A program made the translations under genes and the position numbers. The notes beneath the pieces are model-generated. The model searched no databases. It was not told where the DNA came from and saw only the letters and a program-made list of their open reading frames with translations. From positions 376,960,001 to 377,024,000 of the forward strand of contig NC_067398.1 of assembly GCF_016432865.1 (NCBI RefSeq): a stretch of DNA of 64,000 nt. Reading direction: 5' to 3'. How positions within the stretch are numbered: position 1 is the stretch's first letter; the number at the start of each line of letters is the position of its first letter. Below, piece after piece: positions 1,513 to 60,667 of the stretch. The stretch is from Antechinus flavipes. Lineage: Eukaryota.

Positions 1513-4413
1513 ACTAGGTTTGGAGTCAGGAAGACTCATCTTTGTGAGTTCAAATCTGGTCTCAGACACTGGGCAAGTCACTTAACCCTGTTTGCCTGAA
1601 AAAACTGAATAACAATTTTATGAACCTATAATATGCTCAGTATCTGTTTCTCAGATTAATAGAGTCATACTAACATACTGTTATTATGGCAATTGTTATC
1701 ATGGCAACTGGGGATTATTATCCCCATTTTACAGGTGAGAAAATGTCTTTTCAGAAGGGGCATGAGGGAGGCAAGCTTTGCACAACAAATGGTGGGTGCA
1801 TGAGCTCCTTTGAGGCCACCCATCAGATCCAAACTCTTCATTTTACAGATGAAAGGTGAAATGACTTGCTCAGGGTCACCCTGATAATAAATGTGTAAGA
1901 CAGCATTTAAACTCATGACTTCCTAACTCCGAGTCCAGTGTTTTGTCTATTTATTGTGTTTGCTGTGGATTCATATGCATTTTTTATTGTTATAAAGCAG
2001 AAAAGAGATTCCTCTTCTCCCTTCTTAGGAGAATCAATGAATTTGGGGATATAGAAAGAATCATAGTTTAAGGGAAAACCCAACACATACAGACAGTGCC
2101 CAAAAATGAATTTTTCCATTTTAGTAAATGGAAATAACCAGGGCAGATCTGTTTGAAGAGGCCAGCACAGGGTCACAGACCTCATTCTAAAGTAGGGGGT
2201 CCTAGTCTTTTTTGTGTCGTGAACTCTTTTGTCATCCTGGTAAATTCTATGGACCCTTTCATAACAGATCATTGAAAATATATAAAAATGAAATTCACAG
2301 AATGTCAAAAGAGTCCTATTATAAGAAAACAAAGATATTTTTTCTCATCCAAATTTCCAATCCAAATCTATCCACAGACCCCCAAGTTAAGACTCAGAAC
2401 AGAAGCAAGGGAATCAGAAAGAAAATCCAGATTGCTCAGGGACTTGGAAAGAAAAGAAGAACCTGAAAATTATTCAATTAAGGAAAGAAGGTACTGGAGG
2501 TTTCTCCTGAGGCAAGATTGACTGAAGCTTTTTCTAGGTTGGGGTCAGGCCTCATGCCAGGTAGATAGGCAAATGAGCTACTATTGTTTACCATTCTCTC
2601 TAAGAATACAATAATGACAACAACAATAATAATCCCTCAAACGTTAAATATAAAACCAATAAGACAGCAAATTGTTCCATATCCATTTCCATCCAAATTC
2701 TATCAAAGAAGATAATGAGAATAAAAACTGGAATTTATATAACATGTTAAGGTTTTCAAAGTACTTTAGATGTAATATTTCATTTGAGCCTCTATTTGTA
2801 TGGTAGACATTAAAGGAATTATTGTCCCTATTTTTATAAGTGAGGAAATATCATTTTAGAGGGGGCAGAGTGATTTGCCGAGAATCACACGGCTAGTAAA
2901 TGTTGGCCAGCTTCAAACCCAGTCCTTCCTTACTGAAATCTGGCACTCAGCCTGTTTTGCTAGTTGGGCTACATTAGGGATGTCTTAATATTCCCAGGTC
3001 AGTACCCTCTGGTGGGGAGTCAGTCAGCAAGCCCTTATGAATGGTTACTGCAGGGCCAGACTTTGTGCTAAGTGCAAGGATACAAGGAAAGGCACGCAAT
3101 AGATGCTTCTTAGATAGACCTTATTTCTTTGAATGCTAATAAAGTTCTTAAAAAACAAACACACAGACAAGCCACCCGCTCTGACTCAGGACTTAAAGAG
3201 AGAGAAGTGGCCAGACCCAGGCAGGAAGAGAGGGCTAGGCTTGAGGTCTGGCCTCCAGCCCCTAGGGATGCTGGGCCCAGTGGGCATTGGCTCTCAGAGA
3301 GAGCTGAGAGAATCTGCCCTTCTCCTCCTGCCTGGGCTCCGATTGTCTCCCACCGGTCTCCCTCGGGGCCAGAGAATTCAGGATCTGGTGAGGAGGAAAG
3401 ACAGAAGGAAGGGAACAGGCAGGAAGGAGGAAGGAGGGGAGGGAGATGAGGCTGGAACTGTGATTCAGGCCTGGCCAGGTTCCAGAAATCTCTGTGCAAT
3501 CAACCAAAGAAACACATTTGAGAAAACAGAATTGTAAAAGTAACTTTGAAGACTCTGTTGCCATGGGAACAGATCTGTAAATACTTAACTGCAAACATTA
3601 AGTGACATGCAGCCGCGATTCCGGCCTGCACAGGGAAGGGATGGTAAATTTCACCCACTCTTTAAATAATCAACTCTGATGTTTTCTCTGTCTCTCTCGG
3701 CCTGCTCCCTCCTCCTCCCTTATTCCTACTCCTTCTCCTTCCCACCCTCTCTCTGTCCTTGCTCCCACTCCATTTTATCTCCCTCATCCTTCTCACAATC
3801 CCCTCCTTTTCAGGTTCCCTCCCATTCCCAGATCCTTCCTCTTTGTTCTTCTCTAAAACCCTCTGTCTTACAGAGAAGATAGAACCCAGACCCCAGGGGC
3901 CTTTGTCAATCCTGAGCCCAACTGAAGGCGGAAAAGATAGGAGGAGGCCCAGGTCTGATAGGGAAGATACTTCTCTTATGTCCTGTCTTATGAGAAAGAG
4001 ACATAGGGCAGCTACCTCGGAAGGGATGGAAGGGAAAATCCTACTAGTGAAGCCCTGGTCTCTCAAACACCCTTAAACAGAAAGCAAGATGATGAATTGT
4101 CCCTGTGCTCCCAGCAGGGGAGTTCTGCATGAAATCTGTCATCTTCTCATGTTAGTGCCCCTTCTGCAGTGTTAGAATCGAACTCCCCTGGGGGTAAATT
4201 ATCATCATCTAGGCCAGGGAAGGGGAGAAGGGGGAGGTGGGAGCCATTCGCAGGTGCTGGGGAAAAGGTTAGAGTGCTAAGACAGGAGGCTAGCACCAAG
4301 ATTTGCAGCATGAGTTTGGAGAGAGTAAAGGGGAAAGGTGAGTCCTCATCAGAACAGGCCAGATTGATGCCTTTAAAATTAAGTGCCAGGATGTAATTCA
4401 AAAAATACAGTGC

Positions 4414-4628
4414 CAGGATAAGGCAAAGGATTCCCAAAAAGTCCATAGTCATGACTTAGGGACAGAATCTAGATGTCTCGAATTGTAGCTCACCTTCATG
4501 AGTCAGGGCTAAAGAGAGGGCAGAGGTTCAGGACAAGGCAAAGAACTCCTGAAAAATCAATAGTCATGGCTTAGGAGACAGAGTCTAGATGTCTTGGTTG
4601 TAGCTCACTTTCGTGAGCCAGGGTTAAA
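4414..4628. repeat. Diverged tandem duplication, 2 copies, period 115 bp
   Basis: caggataaggcaaagg...atagtcatgacttagggacagaatctagatgtct...gtagctcac (4414-4513) versus caggacaaggcaaaga...atagtcatggcttaggagacagagtctagatgtct...gtagctcac (4529-4628). Confidence 0.9.
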
Positions 4629-5220
4629 TGCCTCTTGACTATTTTGAGGGAGGAAATACTTGAAAAAGAAGTCAGTTCTCAAAGAAGGTAAACCAAAGTC
4701 TAGCCAAGGGGGCCACAGCAATTTTCCAAAGTGCACTTAGGTACAAGGCAAGGTACATCACATTCAGCAAAGAGTGAGCAGGACTTATCTATAACATTAA
4801 CTCTCCCTCAACTTCTTAAGTGGTAGAAAATGCCCTTAACCCCAGAAAGAAAACCAAGGGCTAGCCTACCTGGGCTCCCATCTCTGCTCTGTGACCCAAA
4901 AAGCTCCCCCCTCTCTCGGTTTCAGTGTTTCCATGAGAGTGTTGGACAAGGTACCTTTTAGCTCTAAGACTGGGACTACCTAAGAATCCTAAAAAATTTC
5001 TTGAATTAGGGTATTCTGGGAAAAGCACTGGGTGTGAAATCGGATGACCTAAGACAGAACGGGATAGCAGAGAGTTCAATTCCCCGCTGTGAGACCTGGA
5101 CAAGTCACTTATTTGAGTGACTTCTCCAAATAAGTGTCTGAGTCCCAGTTTCTTCACTGGACAAACAAGGAGACTGGATTAGGAGGCTGCCTGGGTCCCT
5201 GGCAGCTCTAAAGCCTATGA

Positions 5221-5690
5221 CGCTGTCTCCCCATCCAAGGCTTCCTCCGCCCTCAGTGCCGGCGCGATTTTGGACCCTGCATCCCAACGCTCCAGATGCA
5301 GCCCCTCCCGGCTCTAAAGCTCGGAGCGCCTTCCCTTGGGACTTCTGCGGGGTCTGGGAGAAGCCGGGAAAGGCCGGCTGGGAAGGCTGTCCACCAAGTG
5401 GCTAAGTAAGGAAAGCCCGCCCCCTGCTGGATTTTCCGGACGCTGGCTTCGTTGCCTGAGCTCTTGACAGACAGCAGGGGGCCAAGACAAATCCCGGGGC
5501 GGAAGGTGGGTGCCGCCCCCAGCCAGGTGGTGTTCTACCCCCAAGGCATCCCCCAGAGGCAGACGCTGGGGGCCTCCCAGAAATACCCTGGAAAGGGAAT
5601 GGTGGCGCGGTGTGAGAGAGAAAGCGCTGAATTTACCCTCAGAAGAACTGGGTTTGAGTCTTGGCTCTGCCATTTCCTTCCTGCGCCACT
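5221..5690. promoter_or_regulatory. Small CpG-rich block with clustered CTCF-like motifs
   Basis: 24 CpGs counted in 470 bp, against a strongly CpG-depleted background. CCAGCAGGGGGCG on the - strand at 5418-5430; ACAGCAGGGGGCC on + at 5471-5483; CCACCAAGTGGC on + at 5391-5402. Confidence 0.55.
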
Positions 5691-8049
5691 TTGGGCAAGT
5701 CCCCCCCCCCCCCACCTACCCCGGGGCTGTACAATGAGAGAGATGGGCCAGACAAGTCAGGAAGGAAAGAATGAATGAAAAAAGTGTTAAGTACTCACCA
5801 AATCAACTGATAGCCCAGTGGATAAAGGGCTGGGTCTGAACTCAGACACTAGCTGTTACCTGGCTTTTGTTGCCTCAGTCTATTCAACTATAAAATAGAA
5901 GAAATAATGGCCTCCTAATATCCCATGGTTGTTGGAAGAATAAGTGAGAAAATATTTGTAATTTAAAAAAATAAAAGATATTTAGTACAGCGCCTAGCAC
6001 ATAGTAGGTGCTGTGTAAATGCTTACTCCCTTCCCCAAATATGCCAAGAATTTCACTGTGTAGGGACACAAGTACAAAAGGGAACATGTCCTCACTGTCC
6101 TCAGTGGTTTCATGCTAATAGGGTGTAAGTATGTGTGAGATATGGGGACAAGGGATGAAGTATTTTGGCTTAGAAGTTTACAAATTATTAGAACAAGAAG
6201 GATAGAGATTGGAAAATTCTTTCTAGTAACAATGACAATATTGATTTTATTATGGTGCCAAAACTGGGGAAGAAAAGAAATAAGAAGATAGGGGATACCT
6301 AAAGAAGGTACCTGGGAAGCCAAAGTGAAACACAGCAAGAACCAAGCAAATGGGCCATCTTAGCTGCCCACCAATCAGAACAGTGATACCCCAGGGCAAG
6401 GAATCAAACTAGGATGACAAGACTCATAAACAGGAAAGAGAGATAGTCTCTAAAATCCCTTCTAGCTCTTAAACAGTGACTTATAATCTAGCTTTCTATG
6501 GTGGCAGTGAAAAAAATTCCCAATTTTCAGTCAGACCCAAGTTCAAATCCTTCCTCAGACACTTCTTAGCTATATGACCCTCAACTACTTCACAAGGGAA
6601 AATTCAGATAATATGAGAAAAGATCTTTGCAAATCTTAAATGCACATATAAAAGTTGTTATTATTAATATTACCATTATTATCTGGCTTGGAATGAAGGC
6701 ACAAGACTCTCCAGGCAAGAGATCAGCTTTGCAAGTTGTCAGTGTAGACTGTGGCAGGTAGATTTGTGAGGATGTTTTCTATACTATTCATGGTGATTCT
6801 GTATACTGGGACACACCATGGAATGTCAATTGAGGCAAGATGGGTAAGGAAGGATGGGGAGTAGGGAACTCGGTTCTCTGTTTCCTGTTCATGAGCCATG
6901 TCTTCCCAATTTGACCATGAATTTGCCAGGACAGAAACTATCTCTTCACTTGCCCTACCCCTTCATGGGGCTTAATAAATGCTTGCTGATGGATCAATCA
7001 TTCTTTATCCATATGTATAAGTGACACCACATAGCACAGTGTTTATTGCAATATAGATGGCATTTTATAAGCATATTTGTAGGTATGTCTGTGTGTGTAT
7101 ATGGATGTCCAAAAGACATCCTCAAAAGGATGGTGAGAACGGGATTAGTAAGGAGGGTCTACATCAGACTAGATTGGAAACTACTTGCCCTTGTGTATAA
7201 TTTGATGGCAAAATCACAGAAAGGGTGGTCAGAATTGTCTCCACCCTCCTAGTTCACATGCTTAAAATCCTAATCCCTTTTGTATAGCCCTTTTTATATT
7301 AGCATTGGAATTCAAGTGCCTGCAACTAAGAAGTGCCCCTCTAAGAAAACTCAAAAGGGCCTAAACCATAAAGAACAACAGGTTAAAGGAAACCTTAGAG
7401 GGTTGGGCAGGAATTGGAAGACAGCTCCCGAAAGAGATACTAAAGACCAAGAGACATTTTTTTTGAAGGTGAGATGGCTCATTTTCCCCTCAGATGAACC
7501 AGAGAGAATCTTAACTTGTCAGAAGAGTTGAATCAGAAAACCCTGGGCCAAAAATGGCCTGGCCTTACAGATTAAAAATAGACTCCTAGATGTGAGGGGT
7601 TTCTAAATGTGGTAGGACTCCTGAGTGGAGCACAGCTGGCCTCTCTTTAGCCCTATGTCAGTGTCCTGAATTAAGGCTGGACCTGCTCACTGATTAGGCC
7701 AGGACCCTAGAAGTTTTTGCTATATCAAAACACTGGACTTGGAAAGATGTGGTGACTAAAACCTCATTCCTAGCAAAAGACAACATAGCAAAGGAGGAAG
7801 ACTGTCTTGTACAGTTAGGGATGAAGGTCAGAAGTAAATTGAGGCAGCCTTTCAAAAACTTAGAGGATCAAATAGATTTGGACACTTAGGGCAATTTCTG
7901 CTTGTTGTGTCCATCTGCTACCAAGAGGCCCAGTCAATTCTGGGAAATAGCTATCCATCAGTCCCATATTTCCTATCACATAACAATATCATAACTAGGT
8001 GGAACAGGGACAAAGTGCCAGGATAAAATCAGGAAAACTTCCCTTCCCA

Positions 8050-20870: not shown

Positions 20871-23431
20871 GCATGGGTGAAAAACAGCTTTTATAATCAC
20901 AACTTACAATCTTTGCCTCTCCTGATCCTAAATTTCCACCTATCTAACAGCCCTCAGGTCATCCAGTAGTTCTAGGCACTGAATCAGAGATGGCTGTTGT
21001 CACTCCCATGTCTAATTATGATGGGGACCCCTGATTCTTCTTCTCTTGGTCTAAAAAGGGATTTTTATCCTACTTAAGTCAGCCAAGATGAAATTGAGTG
21101 CTTTTTTTTATTATTAAAAAGGTGTTTCTTTATTATTAAAGAGAAAAAATAGATCATATTAATTACATAAGCAAATAATCCATATGTCTTATCCTAAAAT
21201 CACTAAAAATGGGTTTGGTTTATGTGATACTTGTTCCTGTCCTTATTCCTCTCTTCTATTACCCAAGGAATCCTGAGTGAGAAAACCTCTCTGTAACCCA
21301 AAGATTTTTCTACTGCAATTCAGGCCAGCCTGCACCAATGTCCTAGTAATCTTGACTTTTCTGAAATTCCTAAAAGTTCTTGATTCTGGAAATCTTGTGT
21401 TTTCCCCAACCCTCTCTGACATTGTGAAGATAAGTGTTTACATGGCCTTGTTGAACCTCTGTCATTTCTGAAATCTATCTGAATTATGTCCTTACAAATG
21501 ATTCTTTTCTCTAATTGCCAAAATGAGGTTGCTTTCTCTTCCAATTTCAAAATATCATCTTGGATGTCCTATTAAATTCCCTTTTCCTGATCAAGCAACA
21601 GATAATTAATGCATTTGTAGTGTAGAGATGTTTGGCAAAACTAAGCTCAAGAACCACTCATCTCTATTCCATTCCAAATTATCAACTCCACCTATTTCTC
21701 TAAATTCTTATTGATGACTTATGACTTTCATGTCCCCCAGGGTAGCAGTCTTCTAGAATTCTACCATTACAATTATGTCATAAAAAATACTCACACATAG
21801 TAATACATGGGTGTTAGCATTACAGTAGTAAGAATAAGTAATAATAGATAAGGGATTTTTTTCAATATACAAATGCATCAATATGCGTATTCCTCCCTAT
21901 TGATACAGATCATTCCCCTCTCTGCTTACCCATCCTGTGTGACTCTCATCTATGTCCTCCCTAGGGTTGCCACAGGAGGTCTACCCAATTTGTTAGGACC
22001 TTTCACACTTGCCAAATAGCAAGCTCATATACATTTTTTATTTTATATTTCCATAGTGATGTCTTTTGCACTATTTTCCTCATGTACATATTTATGTTTT
22101 CATACATACATGCATATATGTATGTATGTATAATGTACACACATACTCAATATGTGCTGTCTTCAGTTGGTGTATCTCTGCTTGGAATTTTTTTTTCTGA
22201 TTTTTTAAAAATTTTGCTGAAAAATGTTTGCTGACTAAGGAAGTTCTCCCTTGTCTGTCACTTATTTACATAAGTTAAACTTCAATCTAATATTATTATA
22301 ATCAGTATCCATTTTTTCTTTTTATTAGTATTGATAGCTTATTTAAATGTCATATGGAGTTATTTTTAATTGAAATACATATCTTCTCATGATTATTCTG
22401 TTTTATGATTTGGTTTCAATTTTGATCTTTGCTCTAAGTCTATGGCCTGATTGTACACACACAGCTCATTCAGGGAAAAGTCCCATATCAATAACAAGTC
22501 ATTTCCAATCCATTAGAGAATATAATCAATTTCATTTTTTGTGATATTATCTAGCACTCCCTATGTCCAGAATTATCTGATTCTCTTCTCAAAGAAAGTA
22601 TTAAAGATTTATGTGGATGAAATTTCTATATAATCTCTAAGTCTAGTCCCTCTCATTCTTTACTCCTGAACATTTTCATATATATTTTGTCATATATACA
22701 CAGATACAGAAATACACATATATACATGTCTGTGTACATGTATGTATGTGTGTATATACATAACAGCCACATATTGACTGTATTACTTTAATAAGTCACT
22801 TAACCATTCAATGATCTAGGACAAATTGCAGAAAACATATGGATCTTAATTAGTTAAAGAAATTTTCTTATCAGGAATTTCCCCATATCAGTTTTAGTCC
22901 CTCTCCCTATGTTTTACTTACCTTTCAAATGCTTTCTTTATATTATAATCACAGAGTATTTGTCCATAGAACTTCTTTGCATCGTCATCCTTTGAGGGGG
23001 AAAAATGTTGATGATTAAGCTGTAATTACTTGCATGGTAGTCTTTCTGCAAATATCTGTTATAAGCAATGCAGATTGAGGCTGAATATAAGGGAAGATGT
23101 CCCAATAATTGGAGTTGTTCCAAAATGTACTAAACTGTCTCAGGAGGCAGTGGCAAAAGATAGATGTTTACTTAGGGATTTGTTGTGGGAACTATTCCTT
23201 TTCAGAGTTGTATTGGGATAGATAGGCTCTGAGGTTCCAACTCTAAGATTCTATGATTCTGAGCATTTGGCAGCAATTCATGTAGGGAAAAAACAAAAAC
23301 AAAAAATCTCAGGGTTTTAGTGAACCATAAGCAATTATAAGCTCTACAAGGGCAAAGCCTATATGCAGTAGGTACCTAATAAGTATATGCCATTATTTTT
23401 TGCTTGTAAATTGATAGCAACCAGCAGTTTA

Positions 23432-23728
23432 NNNNNNNNNNNNNNNNNNNNNNNNNNNNNNNNNNNNNNNNNNNNNNNNNNNNNNNNNNNNNNNNNNNNN
23501 NNNNNNNNNNNNNNNNNNNNNNNNNNNNNNNNNNNNNNNNNNNNNNNNNNNNNNNNNNNNNNNNNNNNNNNNNNNNNNNNNNNNNNNNNNNNNNNNNNNN
23601 NNNNNNNNNNNNNNNNNNNNNNNNNNNNNNNNNNNNNNNNNNNNNNNNNNNNNNNNNNNNNNNNNNNNNNNNNNNNNNNNNNNNNNNNNNNNNNNNNNNN
23701 NNNNNNNNNNNNNNNNNNNNNNNNNNNN
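23432..23728. other. Assembly gap (others at 24211-24406, 40939-41353, 46201-46335, 57609-57839, 60079-60247)
   Basis: Runs of N; several border GA/CT-rich low-complexity sequence. Confidence 1.
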
Positions 23729-34690: not shown

Positions 34691-35319
34691 CCTGCCCTCA
34701 AACTGCTAATAATCTACTGTTATTGTTGTTGTTTGTAATTCATTCTCAAAGAGAAGATCAGGAAGGTGTTGCCATGACTTGCAAATGAATTAAACTGGAG
34801 TTAAGGAGGACAGTGCCAGTGATACTTTCTCCTCCAGAGCCATCTGGGTCCAATGGCAAGATATAGATCATGAGGATTGGAGATGGTCCTGATGCAATAA
34901 AAGGATACTAAAGAAATACATTTGAGTATAAAGCTAATTAAGGTGTAAGAGAGCAATAGGAACTCCTACAATTGAATAGGGAGGTAAAGAATGACAGTAA
35001 GAGGTCTTGAGAGGACATGTAAGAAAATCTTCCTGGACCAAAAAAAGAGAAAAGATGAGAAAGAAGGTGAAAGATTGTCACAGGATTCTTATCTGAGAAA
35101 CTAGAGAGACAATATGGGACAGGAAGGAAGGAAGCAAACAAGTATTTATTAAGCACCTATTACGTGCTAGGCACTTTGTAAATATTATCTCATTTAGTCC
35201 TCACAACAATCCTGGGAGATAGATGCTACCATTATCTTCATTCTGCATTTGACAAGCAGACACAGGTTAAGTGACTTGTCCAGGATCACACACCTAGTAA
35301 GTGTCTGAAATGTACCTTA

Positions 35320-36385
35320 CTGTGTTTCCCCGATAATAAGACACTGTCTTATTAATTTTTGGACAGAAAAACACCAGAGGGATTATTTTCAGGGGAAGGC
35401 TTATTTTAATGAACATTGACAGCAATTTTAATAAACAGGTAAATGTGAACAAAAAAAAAAGTATCTTTATTCAATAATGATCATGTCATCTTTTTCAACA
35501 ACATCGTCATAAGTGTCCATACCCTGAATTCCATCCTGGATGTCTTGCGCCTCTATTTCCTTCAGAAGAAGTGGACCCAATCTGTCATGTCCAGCAATAT
35601 AGCTCTCTTTAAATGAACATGTCTTGTCCAGGTAACCTGCTCGTAGTGCCTTGGCAACACAGCTGTCAGTAATTTTATCCCATGACTTCTTCACCCAAGT
35701 CACGACTTCTTGCAGACAGGGCTTCACTAAGTTTCCACGCTGATTTCTTTCCATTCTATTTTCAATGTAGTCATTGACTTCCATGTGCAAATGGTCCTTG
35801 AATGGTTTGTTTATTGCAATATCAAGGGTCTGGAGATAGGCAGTCATTCCTGCAGGAATCATTACTTGATCTATTCTTCTCTCTGCAAGGAAGTTCTTCA
35901 TTTCTTTAGTGCGGTGAGTGCTGGCTAAGTTCTTCTTTTATCCTCCATCATGCCCCCTGAGTTCTTCTTTTATCCTCCATCATGCCCCTTTTATCCTCCA
36001 TCATGCCCCCTCACTCCCGCTTACATACCGGGTTTTTATGTTGTCCTGCCTCAGCTCTCCTCCGTGGCACTGCTCTCAATGGCGCCAGCAAACAAATCAC
36101 TGGGGAAGAACAGGATGATGCGCTCACTGCTGCAGCTCTGATTGGATGCAGCTCAGAAAGCAGCGTGCGTTTCACCCGGGGGGGGGGGGGAAGGGGAGGG
36201 AAGGCAGGGGGAAGATGGTGCATACAGAGGGTACCGTAATGTAGCATGTAGCGCAGGGGATCACCTTCACTACAGTAGCAATCTCAATAGGGCTTATTTT
36301 CAGGGAGGGCTTATTTTTAGAGGAATCTTACACAGTAAGGGGAGGGCTTATTTTCGGGATAGGTCTTATTATCGGGGAAACACAG
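35320..36385 (-). mobile_element. Internally deleted, non-autonomous pogo/Tc2-like (IS630-Tc1-mariner) DNA transposon, 1066 bp
   Basis: Perfect 23-bp TIRs: CTGTGTTTCCCCGATAATAAGAC (35320-35342) and GTCTTATTATCGGGGAAACACAG (36363-36385). TA on both sides (35318-19, 36386-87). Subterminal GGCTTATTTT repeats at both ends and an internal transposase remnant. Confidence 0.95.
35467..35925 (-). pseudogene. C-terminal remnant of a DDE_1 (pogo-type) transposase
   Basis: Uninterrupted frame ASTHRTKEMKNFLAERRIDQVMIPAGMTAYLQTLDIAINKPFKDHL...*. IPAGMT...QTLD..NKPFK matches the pogo motif around the third catalytic Asp. The HTH domains and first two Asp residues are deleted. Confidence 0.9.
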
Positions 36386-36499
36386 TAGTACCTCTAAGAT
36401 AAGGAAGGAAAAAGAAAAAGGAAAAAAAGACCAAAACAGGTTCTTACTGAGCTGATTAAAGGAATAACTCCAGAAATAAGCCAAGTAAATCCCCACTAA

Positions 36500-40810: not shown

Positions 40811-43800
40811 TCCAGGCAGCCCTTTGATCTGGTTTGATGTCTCTTTCAGTTCTTTTTTCCAAAAAGGCTTTTATCCTCTGAAGCCTCTAACTCTCTGGGT
40901 CTTGTCTCTGGTTCTCTCCATCCTATGCCCCCTCTTGTNNNNNNNNNNNNNNNNNNNNNNNNNNNNNNNNNNNNNNNNNNNNNNNNNNNNNNNNNNNNNN
41001 NNNNNNNNNNNNNNNNNNNNNNNNNNNNNNNNNNNNNNNNNNNNNNNNNNNNNNNNNNNNNNNNNNNNNNNNNNNNNNNNNNNNNNNNNNNNNNNNNNNN
41101 NNNNNNNNNNNNNNNNNNNNNNNNNNNNNNNNNNNNNNNNNNNNNNNNNNNNNNNNNNNNNNNNNNNNNNNNNNNNNNNNNNNNNNNNNNNNNNNNNNNN
41201 NNNNNNNNNNNNNNNNNNNNNNNNNNNNNNNNNNNNNNNNNNNNNNNNNNNNNNNNNNNNNNNNNNNNNNNNNNNNNNNNNNNNNNNNNNNNNNNNNNNN
41301 NNNNNNNNNNNNNNNNNNNNNNNNNNNNNNNNNNNNNNNNNNNNNNNNNNNNNGTCTATGCACCTCCCCTCTCGCCATTCATTTTCTTCCCAGCCATAGT
41401 GAGGACAGAGCAATTGCATTATTTTAATATTTTCATAAGATCCAATATCTCATTGATCCCTCTTCCCAGTGAAGATCACTATTTACTTAGACTATCTCAT
41501 TCTTGGTGATTCTTATCCTTGTCATTCCATGAATTCTTTTTTTTTTAAATTAAGCAAAGAGTTGTCTTATCCCTCCCCCAATTAAGAAAGTAAGAAAAAG
41601 AAAATCCCTGTTATAAATTACATTTAAGTTAAACTATAATTAATTCAAACAAATTTCTATGACCCCCCCAAAATATCTGACTGCTTCATAGATGTTGTAT
41701 TTGCCCCAAGTATTCCTCAGAGTCTGTAAAGTTGTTGAGAGAGAGAGAATCAACATAATTCTTTTTCTTCCTAATCTTATATTTTAAAGACAACATTCTA
41801 AGAAGGGATCCAATAAGCTTCATCAGACTGCCCAAACTTCCATGACTCACAGCAAAGATTAAGAATCCCTGCTCTATTCAATGCCCTAAAAACTCTCCAT
41901 TAAGTCTTTTACCACTGCTGGGTACATTTAGGCTATCCAATTGCTGTCCTTCTCTCTAGTTATGGAACATGTCCTTGATCATGACTTTTACCATTTCTTA
42001 TAAGGAAGTCATTGTTGATAATGTGCTGCAGACTACTTACCTTGTATCTTTCCATTGATCTTAAGATCACCTACCGTTCTGAGATTGTAATTTCAATGAC
42101 TCTCAGTCATATCTAGCAATACAGGGAGAACATTGCTGTGAAAAAAAGATCACCAACTTCCCTTGGTGACTAATATGCAAATAAATTGATTTCTTTGGAG
42201 CCTATAGAATTCAAGACTAAAGGCATTTCTGAAGCAAGATTTATGGGATTTATGAGATTCTTGGGATCATCCATCTTGGAACACCTGAGAAGACTTCCTG
42301 AAAGAGGAGGCTGGCTAATGTTTAGAATAATTATATAATGCAGTTTGGTCTAGGACATACTATGAACCAGAAACCAATCCATTCCTCAGCACTTAGGGAC
42401 ATCCCTTTGCATACCTTTCCTCCTTGGGGACATTAATCTCCTCTCTACCCTTAAAAAGCTATAACCCCTCCCACCTTTGTGCCTTGGCTCTTGTTATTTT
42501 TTTTCCTATCTGGCATGCCCTTCTACCTCCTTACTGCTAGATAAATCTCAGACATCCTTCAAGTTGCAGCCCATTTCCTACTGCCTCCATTAAACCCTCC
42601 CTGACCACTCCAAATCCCATTGATTCCTCCTTTCTCTGACCTACTGCAGCACTTAACCTGAGCTGTGCAATCTTGGATTTAATCAATCAGTCAGCTAGCA
42701 TTCATTATAAACTTATATACTAGGAACTGTGCTGATGCATGGCTGTGTCTTAATGTCACACTGTGTCTTTTCTCGTGTTGTTTTGTGTGTGTAAGGTTTG
42801 CCTCCCTAATTAGGCTGGGAGTACTCGCTTTCAGAAGGCACAAAGTGGATCTTCTTCTGGTTCTCCCAACATGAGTAGGAATGGGTCTAAAAACATAATG
42901 GATACTCAGCATAGGTTTGCTGGCTAACTCTTTATTGACTTCTCCTTTGTGCATAGGATTAGAGTAAAGACAATGGGCTACACTAGATTGCCTTTGAGGT
43001 CTCTAATTCCCTGGATTCCATTCTTTGAGGCCCCCTGCATGTGCTCACCTGAAGATGGCAAGCTAAGATCAGAATGGAAAATATGTATGAGCCCACATAT
43101 TAAGTCAGTTGATATAATGTATGTAAACAGTGCAATCTTCTTATTTCCTCCTTAATGCAAATGCTTGTATAAACCTACCATTAAAGCACATTGGCATGCC
43201 TCACACCTACCATCCTTGGTGCCAGAAAGTGGCTGCCTAGAAACTGTGACCCTCAAAGTCCTTTACATAGCCACTGGGCAACCTAGTCATCAGGAGCCAA
43301 CCAAATCGTGACTGGTGGCCCCAGTTCCTCCCATTGTCCCTCCTTCCTGCATTAATTCAACTAGGGAGGGTCAGAACAGGTCCAGGAGTGACTATGTGCA
43401 AGAACCTCAGGCTCTCTACTCCCTCCCCCAAGAAGACTCCCAGGGCAGTGACTCCTAGAAATTCCCCCTCTGTTACCAGCCATTCTCCTTCATTTGTGGT
43501 CCCCTAACCTCCCAGAGACACGAGGACTAACTTTCCACTATGATCAATAAGAAAAGCTAGTACCATGGAAAAGTAAAACATTCAGTCAATAATAATAGCA
43601 TGTATATTGTGTTATTACATAACATATGAATGAATAAAGAAGCATGTATTAACTTCTTGCTATTTATCAGGCAGTGTGCTCATTATAATAGTGGTAAGAA
43701 TTAGTAGACAGTAGATATACCCCTAGTCTGTGAAACAGGATGAGTTGGCTTTAATTCCCCTCCCAATTCCCTTTATCCCGGATACAGACTGACTAGATGA

Positions 43801-46800
43801 ACCTCAAAAGTCATTTGATATCTCTTGGTGTCCAGCAACTCTCAAAGATCATAGGCAGTCAAAGAGTTGATCTGCATTGGGAGAGAGTTTCTCCTTGGAA
43901 GCTTCTAATTGGATGAAATAATGAGTTTGGTTTAAAATAATGACGATGATAGCATTTCTATAGCACTTTTAAAATTTACACGTAGTGCTTTTCTCACATC
44001 TCCACCATGAGATAGATACAAGTACCATTTTTACAGTTGAGGAAATTGAAGCAAAGACATTATATGATTTTTGCATAGTCACACAGCTAAGTGTTGGAAG
44101 TAGGATTTGAATTTACATCTTCTGAGTGCCCAGCAGTTCTCTTTTTATTCTTGTTGCCTCCTTCTCCTATTCCCTGAGAGGAGAAATTTGACTTAGTAAG
44201 TAAAAGTTTTTGGTTCAGAAAGGGAACATCATTCTTTTTAGAAATCCCTAAATAAATATCTGCACAATATAAAGTATCTTTAAGACCTAAGCCAGCCCCA
44301 AGCACAGAAATCCATCTTCCTGGAGGCTGCTTGAGGGAGACTGGCCTTACAAGCAGAACAAGCTGACTTGTTGATGTGACATAGGGACATCCAGATGACC
44401 TTTTTCTGTTCCCAGTTCTTCCCCTAACTTCTTCACCTGCTAAGTGTTTCAATGGAAACTCATTTCTTTGAATCAAGACATTGAAGATCTCAGCTTAAAT
44501 GGAAATACTCCTAAGAAAAGTCACAACTAAAATCAGAGGTGCTTAATTAAATTACAATCCATGGATACCCAAAGTGATGTGTGGAACTAACTTGGATGTC
44601 AAAGAACTCTAACTGAAATTGAGCATTTTCCCCAAATATCTAAAAACATTATTCTGAGAAAGTGTTCATAGGTTTCATCAGATTGCCAAAAGGGTTCAAA
44701 ATATCAATTTTAAAAAACCTACCCTTAATACACTTCATCCCTTAAGTGATTAGCTGACACATTATCGGAGACAGAAGAAAGATATTTTAAATCCTTGCAT
44801 AATGCAGGCATGACCCCAAGGAGAACCACGATAGTGAGAGGCAGAGAGACATAATTCAAGGTGTACTGTACTTGCAATGAGAAGAGGAAGGTTTGAATTC
44901 CAGATCTCCCATTAACTGAATGTAAAATCTAGAGTAAATCACTGAGTCTCGATATCCTCATCTGTAAACGAGACTTAAAGATTCTTGCCCAACTTACCTA
45001 CCAGGAGTGTCAGAAAAGATCTTCATAAATATGAAAATACTATATGAATTAGGATAATTAATAATTCAAATACCAACAAAAGTATGATAAGGGGAGAGGA
45101 GTTCCTCCATAGGCTACATCTCAACAATGACAACCTAGATGGACTTTTCTGGTTCTTGAGATAGTGAGTTAAAAATCCTCCATCCTCCTTCTTCTGAGGG
45201 AAGAGCAGCTCCTTCACTGAGTCCTGGGATCTGACCCAGGAGAAAGAGGAACTACAAGCATGTTGGCTGGAGAGGAACAGATGCCCTTACTCACATAAGC
45301 ACAAAGTTTTTGTCCAAATGCTGAAGATTGTTTTTCCAAAATAAAAGTGGGAGGTAGATACAACACTTCAGATCACAAGCTCATAGGTTGTTAATTTTGC
45401 AAGAAACCCTAGAGATTTAGTCTTTCATTTTACAGATAGGAAAAGTGAGGTTCCGCACAGGGAAAGGACTTTGCTGAAGATTCTATGTGCTTGGGATTCT
45501 TGCCCTCGCAGAGGAACCTCCTTCATGCCAACAAATATTTCCCCAATCCCTTCTCATTCCTGCTTCTATAACTCTGTTGTTATTATACCCATCCAAAGCC
45601 TGCACATCCTGCAAGGCCACAGGTTCAGATACTATCTTCTTCAAGAAGGCTTTTCCAACTACCCCAGCTCATACAACCCCTTCTCTGTCCTCTGACTTTT
45701 GAGGTTAGTAGCTGATCTTACACCTTGCTCTATGATTCTCCCCTTGTTTCAGGTGGGGAGGTTTTGTGTCCTAACCAAACTGAGAACTTTCTTAGAGTAG
45801 GAACCATATACCTTTCCACTGTCTGCTCAAACATTTAGCTCAGAGCAGGGCTGAGAATTGGGGGCACATAAAGGGATAAGGATAAACTCATTTCTTAGTG
45901 AGGCAGTTGGGGGGGGAACTGGATCTGAATTCAAACCCTCCCTCGGGCATTTCTTAGTTGTATGAGTTCAGGTCACTTCACCTCCTTTAGGCCTCAATTT
46001 CCTCATGTGCTAAATAAGGAAAAAACATAGGATCTCATTAATAGAAATTATGAACTCAATGCTGGAGTACAGAAGGAAAATGAGGAGCCAAAGGAACCTG
46101 AGGCCTACAAACTGGCCTTGCAGGGATGTGCCCAGCTGGGATTGCTGGATTACCTTCTGTATCCCCCACTTCAGTCTCTGACTCTCTTCTCCTCTCCTCC
46201 NNNNNNNNNNNNNNNNNNNNNNNNNNNNNNNNNNNNNNNNNNNNNNNNNNNNNNNNNNNNNNNNNNNNNNNNNNNNNNNNNNNNNNNNNNNNNNNNNNNN
46301 NNNNNNNNNNNNNNNNNNNNNNNNNNNNNNNNNNNCTCCCTCCTCCTCCCTCTCTCTCTCTCCTGGACTCCTCCTCTTGTCTTTCCTTGTTTCCTTCTCT
46401 AGGTCTCCCCCGCCCCATTTTTTCCATCTCCTTCCTTTTTCATTAGGATACACTAGCCTAGGCTATATAGTGGCCTTGCTTGCTGCAATATTGTTATGGC
46501 TTGCAGGGATTTATGAGGATGCCTTGTCAATTCCTGCAGACTGCCCCATGCTGTGAGTTATGCAATAGGCCATTGCCTTAATTAAGACAAACGGCCTTTA
46601 CTAGATCTGTCCCAGGGAAAAATTACTCCCTGAGCTCCCTCTGTGTAGCCTAAGAATGACAAATGCCTACCCAGGCAGGTGTGATGCAGTCCTTGTCCCT
46701 GATTCACACAGGCTCCACCTCATCAAGCCGGGTCCCCTGCCCCAGCCCTCTCATCATAGAGGTCCTGGCTTCACCACTACGGTATAATAGACCGTACACA

Positions 46801-57517: not shown

Positions 57518-59875
57518 AATAACCTCCCACTGAAGTCTTTAAAAGCCCAGGTTTAATTTGATCTGAAATGTCATCACCACTTCTGAGAGAAAATATGTTG
57601 ACTTTTCCNNNNNNNNNNNNNNNNNNNNNNNNNNNNNNNNNNNNNNNNNNNNNNNNNNNNNNNNNNNNNNNNNNNNNNNNNNNNNNNNNNNNNNNNNNNN
57701 NNNNNNNNNNNNNNNNNNNNNNNNNNNNNNNNNNNNNNNNNNNNNNNNNNNNNNNNNNNNNNNNNNNNNNNNNNNNNNNNNNNNNNNNNNNNNNNNNNNN
57801 NNNNNNNNNNNNNNNNNNNNNNNNNNNNNNNNNNNNNNNTCAATTTCTCTATCTCTTTATCTTTCCATTCTGCCTTCTCCCATTTCTTCTTTATGGGTCC
57901 TTTCTGAAAAGGGTCCTTGTCTCTTTTTCTCCACTTCTAACTCTACTTCTTCTCTTTCTCTGTCTGTCCCTCTCTTCCTCTATTCTGGCCCTACCACCTG
58001 CATCAGTCCATTTCTCTGGCTATCCTTAACTTTGATATTCAGAGATAAGTAATATCTCAGTGGCCAAGTCAATTTGAGGATTGAGAAGGGAGCTTAGAAG
58101 ACCACCCAGGATACTAATGGCCACCTTGGCAAAAGGCATCTCCCTATCTAGTATATATTTGTGCTCCATTCCTTCTAACAATCCATATCCCAATTCTCTA
58201 GCCACACCCAACTCCAAATTCCCATTCCCCTTTAGGAGATCTTTTCTGACCCCAACCCTGGGAAAACTGGAAGGAAACTCAGATTTCAAAGAAAGCCTGG
58301 AGAGAAGATCCAGAATGAAGAATGGACTAGCTTTGAAAATGGGGCACAAGTCCCTAAGGCTCCAGGGATCTATGGCTCCTGAACTGTCCATAGCCAACCC
58401 TCTCTCTGCCTCCTGGACAAACTACAGTTCTAGACTGAACCTGAGCTTGATCCTTGATTCCTCTTAATATGGGAGGCATGGACTTTCCAATGAAATGGGG
58501 CAACAAGCATGAGAGCACACCTGCCCATGACTTGCCCAAGGAGAATTGATCCCTGAGGCCTTAGGGTGGAGCAAATAAGCACCACAGCCTGATTGGGGGG
58601 CAGGGGACAGCCTGGTACAGTGGAGAGCGGATTGACTCAGCAGACAACAGTCATCTGATATTACTTGTGTGAACTTGGGTAAATCACTTAACAACCTTTC
58701 TTCCAGTTGGACTAGAGGTTATACATAAGGTATAAAAGGGTCCTTCTTGGCTAAAGGACAATATCGAGGGTGGTAGGGTGGGGGTGGAGGAGCAGGTCAA
58801 TCATGGAAAGCTTCCTGGAAAAAAGGCAGTTCTGATCAGGGTTTGGTGGGAGAGCAGAAAAAGAAACAAGCACCTGCATTTCTCCATCACTGCCATCATC
58901 TCATTTTGAACTGGCCTCAGTCAGTGTATCTTATATGATAGGGGAGAGGAAGCAGCATGCAGATGTTTGGGCATATGCAAGGGGTGAGTTCTGCCTGCAG
59001 GGAATAGCTCCTAGTGGGAGAAGAGTAAACAATGCCCTACAGAGGGTATGTGCCCCTAAATTCTTTGTATACCCCTATGTCCATTTATGCTTGTTTGTCT
59101 CTACCCTAGTTGTCCTTCTGTGTTGGTGTATATGTGTCTGAATGTATGCCCTGAGTATATGCTCTTTGTGCCTTTTGGGGTGCACCTATAGACTTATGTA
59201 TATGGGAGCATATTTTTGCATGTGTTTGTATATAGTTGTGTGAATATTTTCAGGTAAGTGTGCATGAGTGCATTTGCATATGCTTGTGTATGTGTGTTTA
59301 TACAGGTGGAATAAAGCCCTTTCTGCTCTGAAGGCTATGTTTGATCTCTGAATCAGACATCAAATTACACTGGGCCTGGGTTTCCTGGAGAAAATGTAAT
59401 TCTATTCCATATAGGAGGGTAGAGGATCTGCTTGCACACAACACTGGATATGTCTTGTGCATGCACACATGCATGCTTGGGTGCATATGTGTATGTATGT
59501 AGGCAAGGGAGAGAGAAAGGGAGAGGTGTGTGTATAGATGTATGTGTTTGAAGTCTACCATGTATTATCATGTTTAAAACTGAGGAACGCTAAAGTTTTT
59601 GAAAAGCAATGTGAAAGAACATGAAAGAGATGGTGTGGTAGGTGCATTGAGCCAGGAGTGGTGGGTGAGGGAAGAAAATATGAAATTTCTCGTCAAATTT
59701 TGAAGCCCTTTCCAATGATGTGACCTAAGGTCATCCATTTGCTTTTTCACAAAGTTGTCCCAGCCTTCTCTACAGAACAGATGGAGGAACGAGGTGGTCT
59801 GAGATTGAGTCCCCCTTGGTCCTCATAAGGCTCCCCAGTTGGAACCCCGGTAAGCATCTCCTAATTTTGTTCCAG

Positions 59876-60004: not shown

Positions 60005-60667
60005 GTAGGAGACGGGCCAATCTGATGAGGGATATGTGGCCCCCACTATTATGGGGTTCCAGCGAGAGAGAGTAAGTGNNNNNNNNNNNNNNNNNNNNNN
60101 NNNNNNNNNNNNNNNNNNNNNNNNNNNNNNNNNNNNNNNNNNNNNNNNNNNNNNNNNNNNNNNNNNNNNNNNNNNNNNNNNNNNNNNNNNNNNNNNNNNN
60201 NNNNNNNNNNNNNNNNNNNNNNNNNNNNNNNNNNNNNNNNNNNNNNNAGAAAGACAGAGATAGAGAGATAAGAGACAGGCAGTAAACAACAGGCAGAATT
60301 CATCACTGCCAGACTGATCTGAGGGGGCTGTGTCATGGAGAGTTTTCCCTATTGAAGCCGTGGTTAGCAATAGGTGAGGGAAGGATTCTGAAGGAGAATA
60401 GAGAGCAGAGTTTAGAAGATGGAAATTTATAAGACCCTCTTTATCCAAGCTACCAAGAGGCAGAGAGGGGAATGGGTCTGCTGTCCTCCCCCTCCCCCTC
60501 TTTCTCTTTCTCCCCCATCATCTGGTTCTTCTTGTCTCTGAAGCTCTGTCTCCAGTTATCTCTCCCTGTGCCCTCTTCTGCTCCATTGTCCCATGGGTTG
60601 GGTCAGGGTTTGGGCTGAATGGGGTTCAGAGCTCCATTTTCTCACCAGATCACTCTCCCCTCATCAG

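What the first reader, a model, noticed from the sequence alone, without database searches (positions are those of the whole stretch)
35320..36385. Young-looking pogo/Tc2 (DD35D-type) DNA transposon: horizontal-transfer candidate
Seen: perfect 23-bp TIRs, intact TA TSD, about 150 codons with no stop or frameshift, and many retained CpGs, unlike every other repeat here. Inference: if the deleted second Asp lay two residues before ASTH (DxASTH), the spacing to the QTLD Asp is 35, which is the DD35D/Passer (Tc2-related) group. Established: recent DNA transposons in mammals generally entered by horizontal transfer. From memory the termini resemble elements in squamates and bats; this is unverified.
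Basis: partly seen in the sequence, partly recalled or inferred. Interest (0 to 1): 0.7.

Follow-up and report, generated by a model that had tools for sequence, protein, structure and literature searches.

The report
Deleted Passer transposon copy in marsupial
This is a real, fairly young (a few million years old) but crippled copy of a cut-and-paste "jumping gene" of the known Passer/pogo family. The same family, almost unchanged, also sits in the sugar glider, so it very probably entered Australian marsupials sideways from another animal rather than by descent.

Summary
At 35320-36385 lies a 1066-bp element with perfect 23-bp inverted ends and TA on each side. On the minus strand it keeps an unbroken 152-codon tail of a DDE_1 transposase. 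Its CpG content is about 4 times the window's.

It is an internally deleted, non-autonomous copy of a Passer (pogo superfamily, DD35D) transposon. The first 280 codons, including two of the three catalytic Asp, are gone, and the break is patched by a small perfect tandem duplication.

An intact 432-aa partner, P0192, is 96% identical to the remnant. P0192 has HTH_Tnp_Tc5 and DDE_1 domains and D-35-D spacing. Its 90% cluster also holds a sugar glider (Petaurus breviceps) protein: a SCAN domain fused to the whole transposase, 94% identical to this copy. The next relatives drop to 82% (horseshoe bat) and 79% (common lizard), in a tree that scrambles host relationships.

Six private amino-acid changes put this copy about 1.8% from its founder, roughly 3-11 My. 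That is far too similar to the glider copy for vertical descent over about 60 My, if the host is Antechinus as earlier scan notes say; I did not verify the host.

The scan already found this family elsewhere in this genome (s1-180310). New here are the deletion anatomy, the sugar glider link and the age estimate. It is a new member of a known kind, of moderate interest.

The parts
35318..35319 (.). Left target-site duplication, TA
   Evidence: the inverted-repeat arms extend to 25 nt because the flanking TA is palindromic.
35320..35342 (+). Terminal inverted repeat; this is the 3' end in the transposase sense
   Evidence: perfect 23-nt match to the other end; 0 chance matches in shuffles.
35334..35354 (.). 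Short palindrome made by the inner TIR half and an inverted copy of it
   Evidence: self-match 20/21, reverse orientation; 9-bp stem in the fold; overall z-score only -1.9, so weak.
35380..35412 (+). Two subterminal TIR-like 15-nt motifs (35380-35394 and 35398-35412)
   Evidence: the degenerate motif hits 5 times, all inside the element, with 0.08 expected; 35378-35407 is 90% identical to 36289-36317. The second motif here is a near match seen by eye.
35467..35469 (-). Natural stop codon of the transposase
   Evidence: the C-terminus ...DDMIIIE aligns with the ends of full-length relatives.
35470..35925 (-). Transposase remnant of 152 codons, equal to residues 281-432 of the intact 432-aa family protein. 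It keeps only the third catalytic Asp (QTLD).
   Evidence: Pfam DDE_1, profile positions 98-174 of 177, E 3.8e-7; 146/152 identical to P0192; tblastn match runs exactly 35925 to 35470.
35926..36009 (.). Deletion junction with filler: a perfect tandem duplication giving three copies of a roughly 21-nt unit. Homology to the transposase stops here.
   Evidence: period 32 x1.9 and period 21 x2.0, both 100% matches; no N-terminal coding left anywhere in the window.
36010..36362 (-). 5' non-coding part, 52% GC with 11 CpGs counted over 35938-36362. Presumed 5' UTR or promoter of the parent element; not tested.
   Evidence: Assigning it to the parent is inference, because no DNA of a full-length copy could be fetched.
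36291..36359 (+). Three subterminal TIR-like 15-nt motifs (36291-36305, 36308-36322, 36345-36359), all in the same orientation as the inner half of the adjacent TIR
   Evidence: for the first two; the third is a near match seen by eye.
36363..36385 (-). Terminal inverted repeat; this is the 5' end in the transposase sense
36386..36387 (.). Right target-site duplication, TA

Best explanation
The element is a non-autonomous, internally deleted copy of a Passer-family (pogo superfamily, DD35D) cut-and-paste DNA transposon. Shown: it inserted at a TA. It kept both 23-bp ends and the last 152 codons of the transposase gene. It lost the first 280 codons, which encode the DNA-binding domain and the first two catalytic Asp. 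Inferred: the deletion arose by interrupted gap repair, which left the short perfect tandem duplication at the junction. The copy cannot encode an active enzyme. With both ends and the TIR-like subterminal motifs intact, it could only have been moved by transposase supplied in trans by full-length copies of the P0192 type (432 aa). It has since decayed neutrally by about 1.8% (range about 0.8-3.5%), which is roughly 3-11 My at the marsupial rate of 3.21e-9 per site per year. Two of its six private amino-acid changes are CpG-to-CpA transitions. The family as a whole most probably entered Australian marsupials by horizontal transfer from an unidentified donor. It reached two orders (dasyurids and the sugar glider) within about the last 10 My, either through separate invasions or through transfer between them.
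For: Anatomy. Family: DDE_1 hit. Relatives read WDSASTH...QTLD with 35 residues between the Asp and 103 between the first two. Full-length relatives are 431-461 aa with HTH_Tnp_Tc5 plus DDE_1 and no CENP-B_N domain. The TIR is 17/23 identical to published Passer TIRs. Autonomous partner: P0192 is intact at 432 aa and 96% identical to the remnant. Sugar glider XP_068919392.1 carries the whole transposase, 98% identical to P0192 and 94% to this copy. Age: 6 private changes in 152 codons fit about 1.8% divergence; the rate comes from PMC3621081. The 31-mer shares of 0.30-0.70 in 10 coded organisms from 7 studies fit a multi-copy family at 1-4% divergence. Horizontal transfer: the window copy, P0192 and Petaurus form a clade with 100% support on a 0.17 stem, nested among lizard, bat, frog, snake and nematode sequences with host relationships scrambled. 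The nearest non-marsupial proteins are 82% and 79% identical. At the divergence expected for neutral copies separated about 60 My per lineage (at least 30%), simulation gives about 83 amino-acid differences, against 9 observed. Marsupials are absent from both published Passer host surveys.
Against: Host identity (Antechinus flavipes, order Dasyuromorphia) rests on earlier scan notes only; I could not verify it, and the cross-order argument depends on it. The organism behind P0192 is unknown (Logan contig); its zero-length branch suggests a consensus-like assembly rather than a proven intact locus. The nearest non-marsupial relative is only 82% identical, so no donor is identified. The gap-repair origin of the deletion and the role of the subterminal motifs are inferences.
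Confidence: 0.8

Rival explanations
1. Vertical persistence. A Passer lineage has lived in australidelphian marsupials since before the orders split about 60 Mya. Its autonomous copies were kept intact by selection for transposition, and this copy is a recent offshoot. No horizontal transfer occurred within marsupials, though an old one into their ancestor remains possible.
For: The family occurs in at least two marsupial orders if the host is Antechinus. The marsupial sequences form one clade on a distinct 0.17 stem. No donor above 82% identity was found.
Against: All 9 differences between this copy and the Petaurus protein over 152 aa are singletons relative to P0192: 6 are private to this copy and 3 to the Petaurus protein. 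No fixed lineage differences are therefore visible. P0192 and Petaurus differ at only 9 of 432 residues. DNA transposons are reported to evolve neutrally within genomes between transfers (PMC7070016; OC1_Das in PMC3621081), which predicts far greater divergence after 60 My.
Confidence: 0.1
2. A single-lineage story. The window's genome belongs to the same order as, or is close kin to, Petaurus, so the 94% match is simply another copy in a related genome. Horizontal entry into marsupials would then rest on patchiness alone.
For: I did not verify the host species with any tool. Organism names in the run search were coded.
Against: Eleven earlier follow-up notes on this genome name Antechinus flavipes, some citing annotated records. 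A prior follow-up of another copy reports the family in carnivorous marsupials.
Confidence: 0.05
3. A domesticated or exapted fragment. The intact 144-152-codon frame is preserved because the host uses it, for example as a truncated regulatory protein, rather than because the copy is young.
For: The frame is unbroken over 156 codons. Passer transposases have been domesticated before (POGK, POGZ; PMC7386202). The sugar glider has a SCAN-transposase gene model.
Against: At 1.8% neutral divergence about 70% of such frames stay open by chance. The six private changes hit positions where P0192 and Petaurus agree with each other (H47, L66 and I124 also depart from the residue of the wider alignment), and two are CpG decay. 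The fragment lacks the DNA-binding domain and two catalytic residues. It still has both TIRs and the TSD, like an ordinary insertion. RNA evidence could not be examined: the one run search asked for DNA only and no reads could be laid.
Confidence: 0.03

Closest known systems
Passer family (DD35D) of the pogo superfamily (Gao et al. 2020, PMC7386202; Wang et al. 2023, PMC9976928)
   Same: [quoted passage not shown] HTH_Tnp_Tc5 DNA-binding domain. A 432-aa protein, within the published range of 400-500 aa. TA target-site duplication. Short TIRs under 30 bp whose sequence is 17/23 identical to the published Helobdella and Eptesicus Passer TIRs. The closest proteins come from species listed as Passer hosts (Helobdella robusta, Pipistrellus kuhlii, Crotalus horridus).
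   Different: The host group is new: neither survey lists any marsupial; the mammals they list are bats, Afrotheria, a few rodents, one insectivore, cetartiodactyls and monotremes. This particular copy is a 1066-bp deletion derivative, below the 1.6-4.0 kb given for intact elements. It carries six extra TIR-like subterminal motifs, which were not compared with other Passers.
OC1_Das and hAT-1_MEu, horizontally transferred hAT transposons of dasyurids and other Australian marsupials (PMC3621081, PMC4408412)
   Same: A DNA transposon family in dasyurids with low copy divergence, neutral decay after insertion and a patchy distribution across marsupial orders. OC1 occurs in dasyuromorphs and, outside them, in one diprotodontian, the honey possum. 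The dating logic is also the same.
   Different: A different superfamily (pogo/Passer, TA duplication, rather than hAT with an 8-bp duplication). This copy is younger: about 1.8%, against a mean of 5.4% for OC1_Das.
Bat and squamate Passers (PasserC-bats, PasserC-snakes and PasserC-lizards in the Wang et al. supplementary table)
   Same: The nearest named protein relatives are Rhinolophus at 82% and Zootoca at 79%. The termini are similar, and several of these families are also young.
   Different: At 18-21% amino-acid divergence, none of them is the direct donor.
Internal-deletion derivatives (MITE precursors) of Tc1/mariner/pogo elements
   Same: Both ends are kept, the middle of the transposase gene is lost, there is filler or duplication at the junction, and movement depends on transposase supplied in trans.
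   Different: It still carries a long intact coding tail. Whether this deletion form was itself amplified into a subfamily is unknown.

Membership tests
pogo superfamily | Transposase with a Pfam DDE_1 (PF03184) catalytic domain | tested here: met
   E 3.8e-7, 30.3 bits against a cut-off of 22, profile positions 98-174 of 177. Full-length family mate P0192: E 2e-19.
Passer | [quoted passage not shown] | tested here: met
   The second Asp is deleted in this copy. In P0192, Petaurus P0267 and four other relatives, D2 to D3 is exactly 35 residues, and the remnant aligns without gaps from ASTH to QTLD.
Passer | TA target-site duplication and short TIRs (under 30 bp) of the CCGTA/CTGTA type | tested here: met
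   TA on both sides and a 23-bp TIR starting CTGTG. Identity to published TIRs is 17/23, 17/23, 15/23 and 14/23, against a shuffle maximum of 16.
Passer | DNA-binding region of HTH_Tnp_Tc5 with or without BrkDBD, and no CENP-B_N; protein of 400-500 aa | tested here: met
   Met for the family mate, not for this copy, where the region is deleted. P0192 is 432 aa with HTH_Tnp_Tc5 at residues 71-134 plus DDE_1. Relatives show weak BrkDBD or HTH_Tnp_1 hits.
Passer | Placement inside the Passer clade in a tree that includes reference pogoR, Tigger, Lemi, Mover and Fot transposases | tested here: inconclusive
   The tree contains only relatives retrieved here. They come from species reported to host Passer, but no labelled reference sequences of the other pogo families were available.
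Tc2 (C. elegans) group | Specific relationship to Tc2 transposase | not tested
No Tc2 sequence was available.
Horizontally transferred transposon | Similarity between host lineages far above that expected from their divergence time | tested here: inconclusive
   This copy differs from the Petaurus protein at 9 of 152 residues, against about 83 expected under neutral descent. Three things prevent a firm result: the comparison is at protein level only, the host order comes from earlier notes, and no dS comparison with host genes was possible.
Horizontally transferred transposon | Patchy distribution and a tree incongruent with host phylogeny | tested here: met
   marsupial, lizard, bat, frog, snake, nematode, leech, octopus and spider sequences are interleaved; no other marsupial protein, and none between 82% and 96% identity.
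Horizontally transferred transposon | Absence at orthologous sites or from sister lineages | not testable with these tools
Autonomous (active) transposon | Complete transposase ORF between the TIRs | tested here: not met
   Only residues 281-432 remain, and there is no N-terminal coding sequence anywhere in the window.

The most novel reading that the evidence does not exclude
Passer is, or was until very recently, a live DNA transposon in Australian marsupials that moved between orders (dasyurids and petaurid gliders) within the last few million years. The sugar glider still carries a complete, near-consensus transposase ORF. That ORF is either still capable of transposition, which would make this one of very few candidate active DNA transposons in mammals, or it is being captured as a SCAN-transposase fusion gene.
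Probability: 0.25. Interest if true: 0.7.

Novelty: new member of a known kind. Interest (0 to 1): 0.42.

Why it matters
Most mammalian DNA transposons died out tens of millions of years ago; recent ones are rare and are taken as markers of horizontal transfer. A Passer family at about 2% divergence in a dasyurid, almost identical in a sugar glider, adds marsupials to the host range of a family that has been shown to be highly active in fish. It gives a second superfamily, after hAT (OC1 and hAT-1_MEu), showing cross-order spread in Australian marsupials. It also points to an intact transposase in a mammal that could be tested for activity or domestication. For this locus alone the finding is ordinary: one dead deletion copy with no sign of host function.

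Tried and rejected
This ruled out copy-number, variant, empty-site and full-length-junction evidence.
As a result, no DNA, sample or organism could be obtained for P0192, P0153, P0154 or P0166.
3. The exact TIR was scanned against viral contigs with 0 hits. A profile of the family against viral contigs found no relative.
4. P0192 against JGI metagenome contigs gave one locus at 71% identity and nothing closer.
5. Searching the Passer paper's supplements for family protein motifs and for DNA words from this copy gave 0 hits; the stored rows appear to be cut.
6. Rfam on the element found nothing.
7. Earlier-findings look-ups by sequence and by a seven-word query were blank.
8. The Tasmanian devil TE paper does not mention pogo, Tigger or mariner elements, and no supplement is held for it.
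9. I looked for a lineage-specific ORF in the window to confirm the host species and found none suitable.
10. The hairpin at the left end is not significantly more stable than shuffles (z -1.9), so I make nothing of it.

Full report
**Observation.**
Positions 35320-35342 and 36363-36385 are perfect 23-nt reverse complements, each flanked by TA. The 23-mer occurs nowhere else in the 64-kb window even with three mismatches, and no shuffle produced a match. On the minus strand the frame is open for 156 codons, from 35937 down to 35470, and is followed by the stop codon at 35467-35469. The element has 19 CpGs, an observed/expected ratio of 0.36. Both flanks give 0.08 and the whole window 0.10. The only sliding windows that score higher lie in a GC-rich stretch near 4400-5750, which looks like a CpG island rather than a repeat.

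**What the ORF is.**
Pfam places it in DDE_1, covering profile positions 98-174 of 177 (E 3.8e-7). That is the last third of a pogo-type catalytic domain.

- An exhaustive search of 1.84 billion cluster representatives gave 1130 hits. Word searches added named relatives.
- Alignments show that relatives read ...W-D-S-A-S-T-H-R...L-Q-T-L-D.
- In six full-length relatives the second and third Asp are separated by exactly 35 residues, and the first and second by 103.
- The remnant ends at the family's natural C-terminus.

**What is missing.**
tblastn with the family's intact protein matches the window only at 35925-35470, which corresponds to residues 281-432 of 432. Homology therefore starts precisely at the Ala of ASTH. 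The 280 upstream codons are gone; they encode the HTH_Tnp_Tc5 DNA-binding domain and the first two catalytic Asp.

At the break (35926-36009) lies a perfect tandem duplication with three copies of a roughly 21-nt unit. I read this as filler left by interrupted gap repair, which is an inference. The remaining 353 bp, up to the other TIR, are non-coding and GC-rich. They are presumably the parent's 5' region, but I could not fetch a full-length copy's DNA to check.

**Ends.**
Besides the TIRs, a 15-nt motif resembling the inner half of the TIR recurs near both ends. The degenerate pattern hits five times in the window, all inside the element, with 0.08 expected. Two further near matches are visible by eye, plus an inverted copy beside the left TIR (35334-35354), which gives the six extra motifs. 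All of these are co-oriented, so they are direct repeats of the TIR at the transposase-sense 5' end and inverted relative to the TIR at the 3' end. They are plausible extra transposase-binding sites, but this was not tested.

**Family.**
The features published for Passer are DD35D spacing, a TA duplication, TIRs under 30 bp, an HTH_Tnp_Tc5 domain with or without BrkDBD, and a protein of 400-500 aa (PMC7386202; PMC9976928).

- All are met here or in the intact family mate.
- The TIR matches those in the Passer paper's supplementary table. It is 17/23 identical to Helobdella PasserB and to Eptesicus PasserC-bats, 15/23 to Protobothrops and 14/23 to Anolis. The maximum over 10,000 shuffles was 16.
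- I could not include labelled reference sequences of the other pogo families in a tree, so the phylogenetic criterion is only partly met.

**The autonomous partner and the sugar glider.**
Among 5.8 billion clustered proteins, the best match is P0192. It is an intact 432-aa protein with HTH_Tnp_Tc5 and DDE_1 domains, from a 1602-bp Logan contig of unknown organism, and it is identical to the remnant at 146 of 152 residues.

Its 90% cluster has one other member, XP_068919392.1 of Petaurus breviceps papuanus. That 626-aa model is a SCAN domain (residues 48-136) followed by the complete transposase. The transposase part is 98% identical to P0192 and 94% identical to the window copy.

In the tree these three form a clade with 100% support. 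P0192 sits on a zero-length branch, so it looks founder- or consensus-like. That may simply reflect collapsed assembly of many copies, so it does not prove that an intact locus exists. The Petaurus ORF, in contrast, lies on a 2.3-Mb contig.

**Age.**
The window copy differs from P0192 at six residues: T6, H47, L66, C103, I124 and K145 of the remnant.

- At all six positions Petaurus agrees with P0192, so the changes are private to this copy.
- Two are CpG-to-CpA changes.
- Simulated neutral mutation of this coding sequence gives six amino-acid changes at about 1.8% divergence (plausible range about 0.8-3.5%). At that level about 70% of frames remain open and about 40% of TIR pairs remain perfect, so the intact look needs no selection.
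- At the marsupial neutral rate used for OC1_Das, 3.21e-9 per site per year (PMC3621081), this is about 5-6 My (range 3-11 My).
- The run search agrees. Ten coded organisms in seven studies hold 0.30-0.70 of the element's 31-mers in low-coverage contigs, as expected for a multi-copy family 1-4% diverged.

**Horizontal transfer.**
Outside the marsupial clade, identity to P0192 drops at once to 82% (Rhinolophus ferrumequinum), 79% (Zootoca vivipara) and 72-76% (Pipistrellus, frogs, Crotalus). For the shorter or partial sequences compared with the window remnant, it is about 70-76% (Helobdella, Stegodyphus, Trichuris). The tree interleaves these hosts with short, poorly resolved branches. This is the usual signature of repeated transfer.

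Neither Passer survey lists a marsupial. I found no paper describing one.

Earlier notes of this scan name the genome as Antechinus flavipes; eleven follow-ups say so. I could not verify this. If it is correct, this copy and the Petaurus copy sit in orders that separated about 60 Mya (PMC4408412). Neutral copies would then differ by 30% or more, which is about 83 amino-acid differences over these 152 codons. Nine are observed, all of them singletons. Vertical descent of neutral copies is therefore excluded.

Long-term vertical persistence under selection is unlikely but not formally excluded without synonymous-site data.

**Limits.**
I worked beside those places and sent none of their letters to any search tool afterwards.
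- As a result I have no copy-number estimate of my own, no orthologous empty site, no DNA of the full-length form and no donor.
- Scans of viral and JGI metagenome contigs gave nothing closer than 71%.

**Relation to earlier scan findings.**
The scan has met this family before on other DNA of this genome. Finding s1-180310 was followed up as an old Passer copy present in thousands of copies in carnivorous marsupials. At least three other first-reader notes describe similar pogo/DD35D insertions. My results agree with these notes. They add the deletion anatomy of this copy, the sugar glider (diprotodontian) link with an intact SCAN-fused transposase, and an explicit age estimate.

**Verdict.**
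The element is a new host-group member of a known transposon family. This locus itself is a dead passenger. The interest lies in the family's cross-order distribution and in the intact glider ORF.

Noticed in passing
P0267 (XP_068919392.1, Petaurus breviceps papuanus), not in the window: The sugar glider gene model fuses a SCAN domain (residues 48-136) to a complete, near-consensus Passer transposase; three isoform accessions are listed. Separate SCAN- or KRAB-linked relatives also appear: P0195 (695 aa, SCAN plus transposase, 79% to P0192, beside the Zootoca sequence in the tree) and P0311 (a Pantherophis 'zinc finger protein 197-like' with SCAN and KRAB). These may be recurrent host-transposase fusions or annotation read-through.
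   Followed up: partly
window 4400-5750: This is the only other stretch of the window with CpG observed/expected above 0.33. GC reaches 0.63 at 5250-5749. It looks like a CpG island or promoter rather than a repeat.
   Followed up: partly
window 35311-35319 and 36386-36393: The hexamer GTACCT lies on both sides of the insertion, at different offsets from the TA. The pre-insertion site would therefore read GTACCT-TA-GTACCT. This may be chance or a target-site preference.
   Followed up: no
window 35220-35317 and 36388-36430: By eye, the element sits at the end of a CORE-SINE/MIR-like repeat followed by an A-rich tail, so it would be younger than that SINE.
   Followed up: no
relatives: Close relatives of this Passer clade occur in parasites and small invertebrates: the whipworms Trichuris suis and T. 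trichiura, a mite, a leech and the microsporidian Enteropsectra breve. Several bat and snake gene models are chimeras of host exons with this transposase (R3HDM1 and DNAJC17 in bats, among others).
   Followed up: no
window 23400-23700, 40940-41360, 46130-46260, 57610-57840, 60080-60250: Runs of N interrupt the window (1443 N in all).
   Followed up: no
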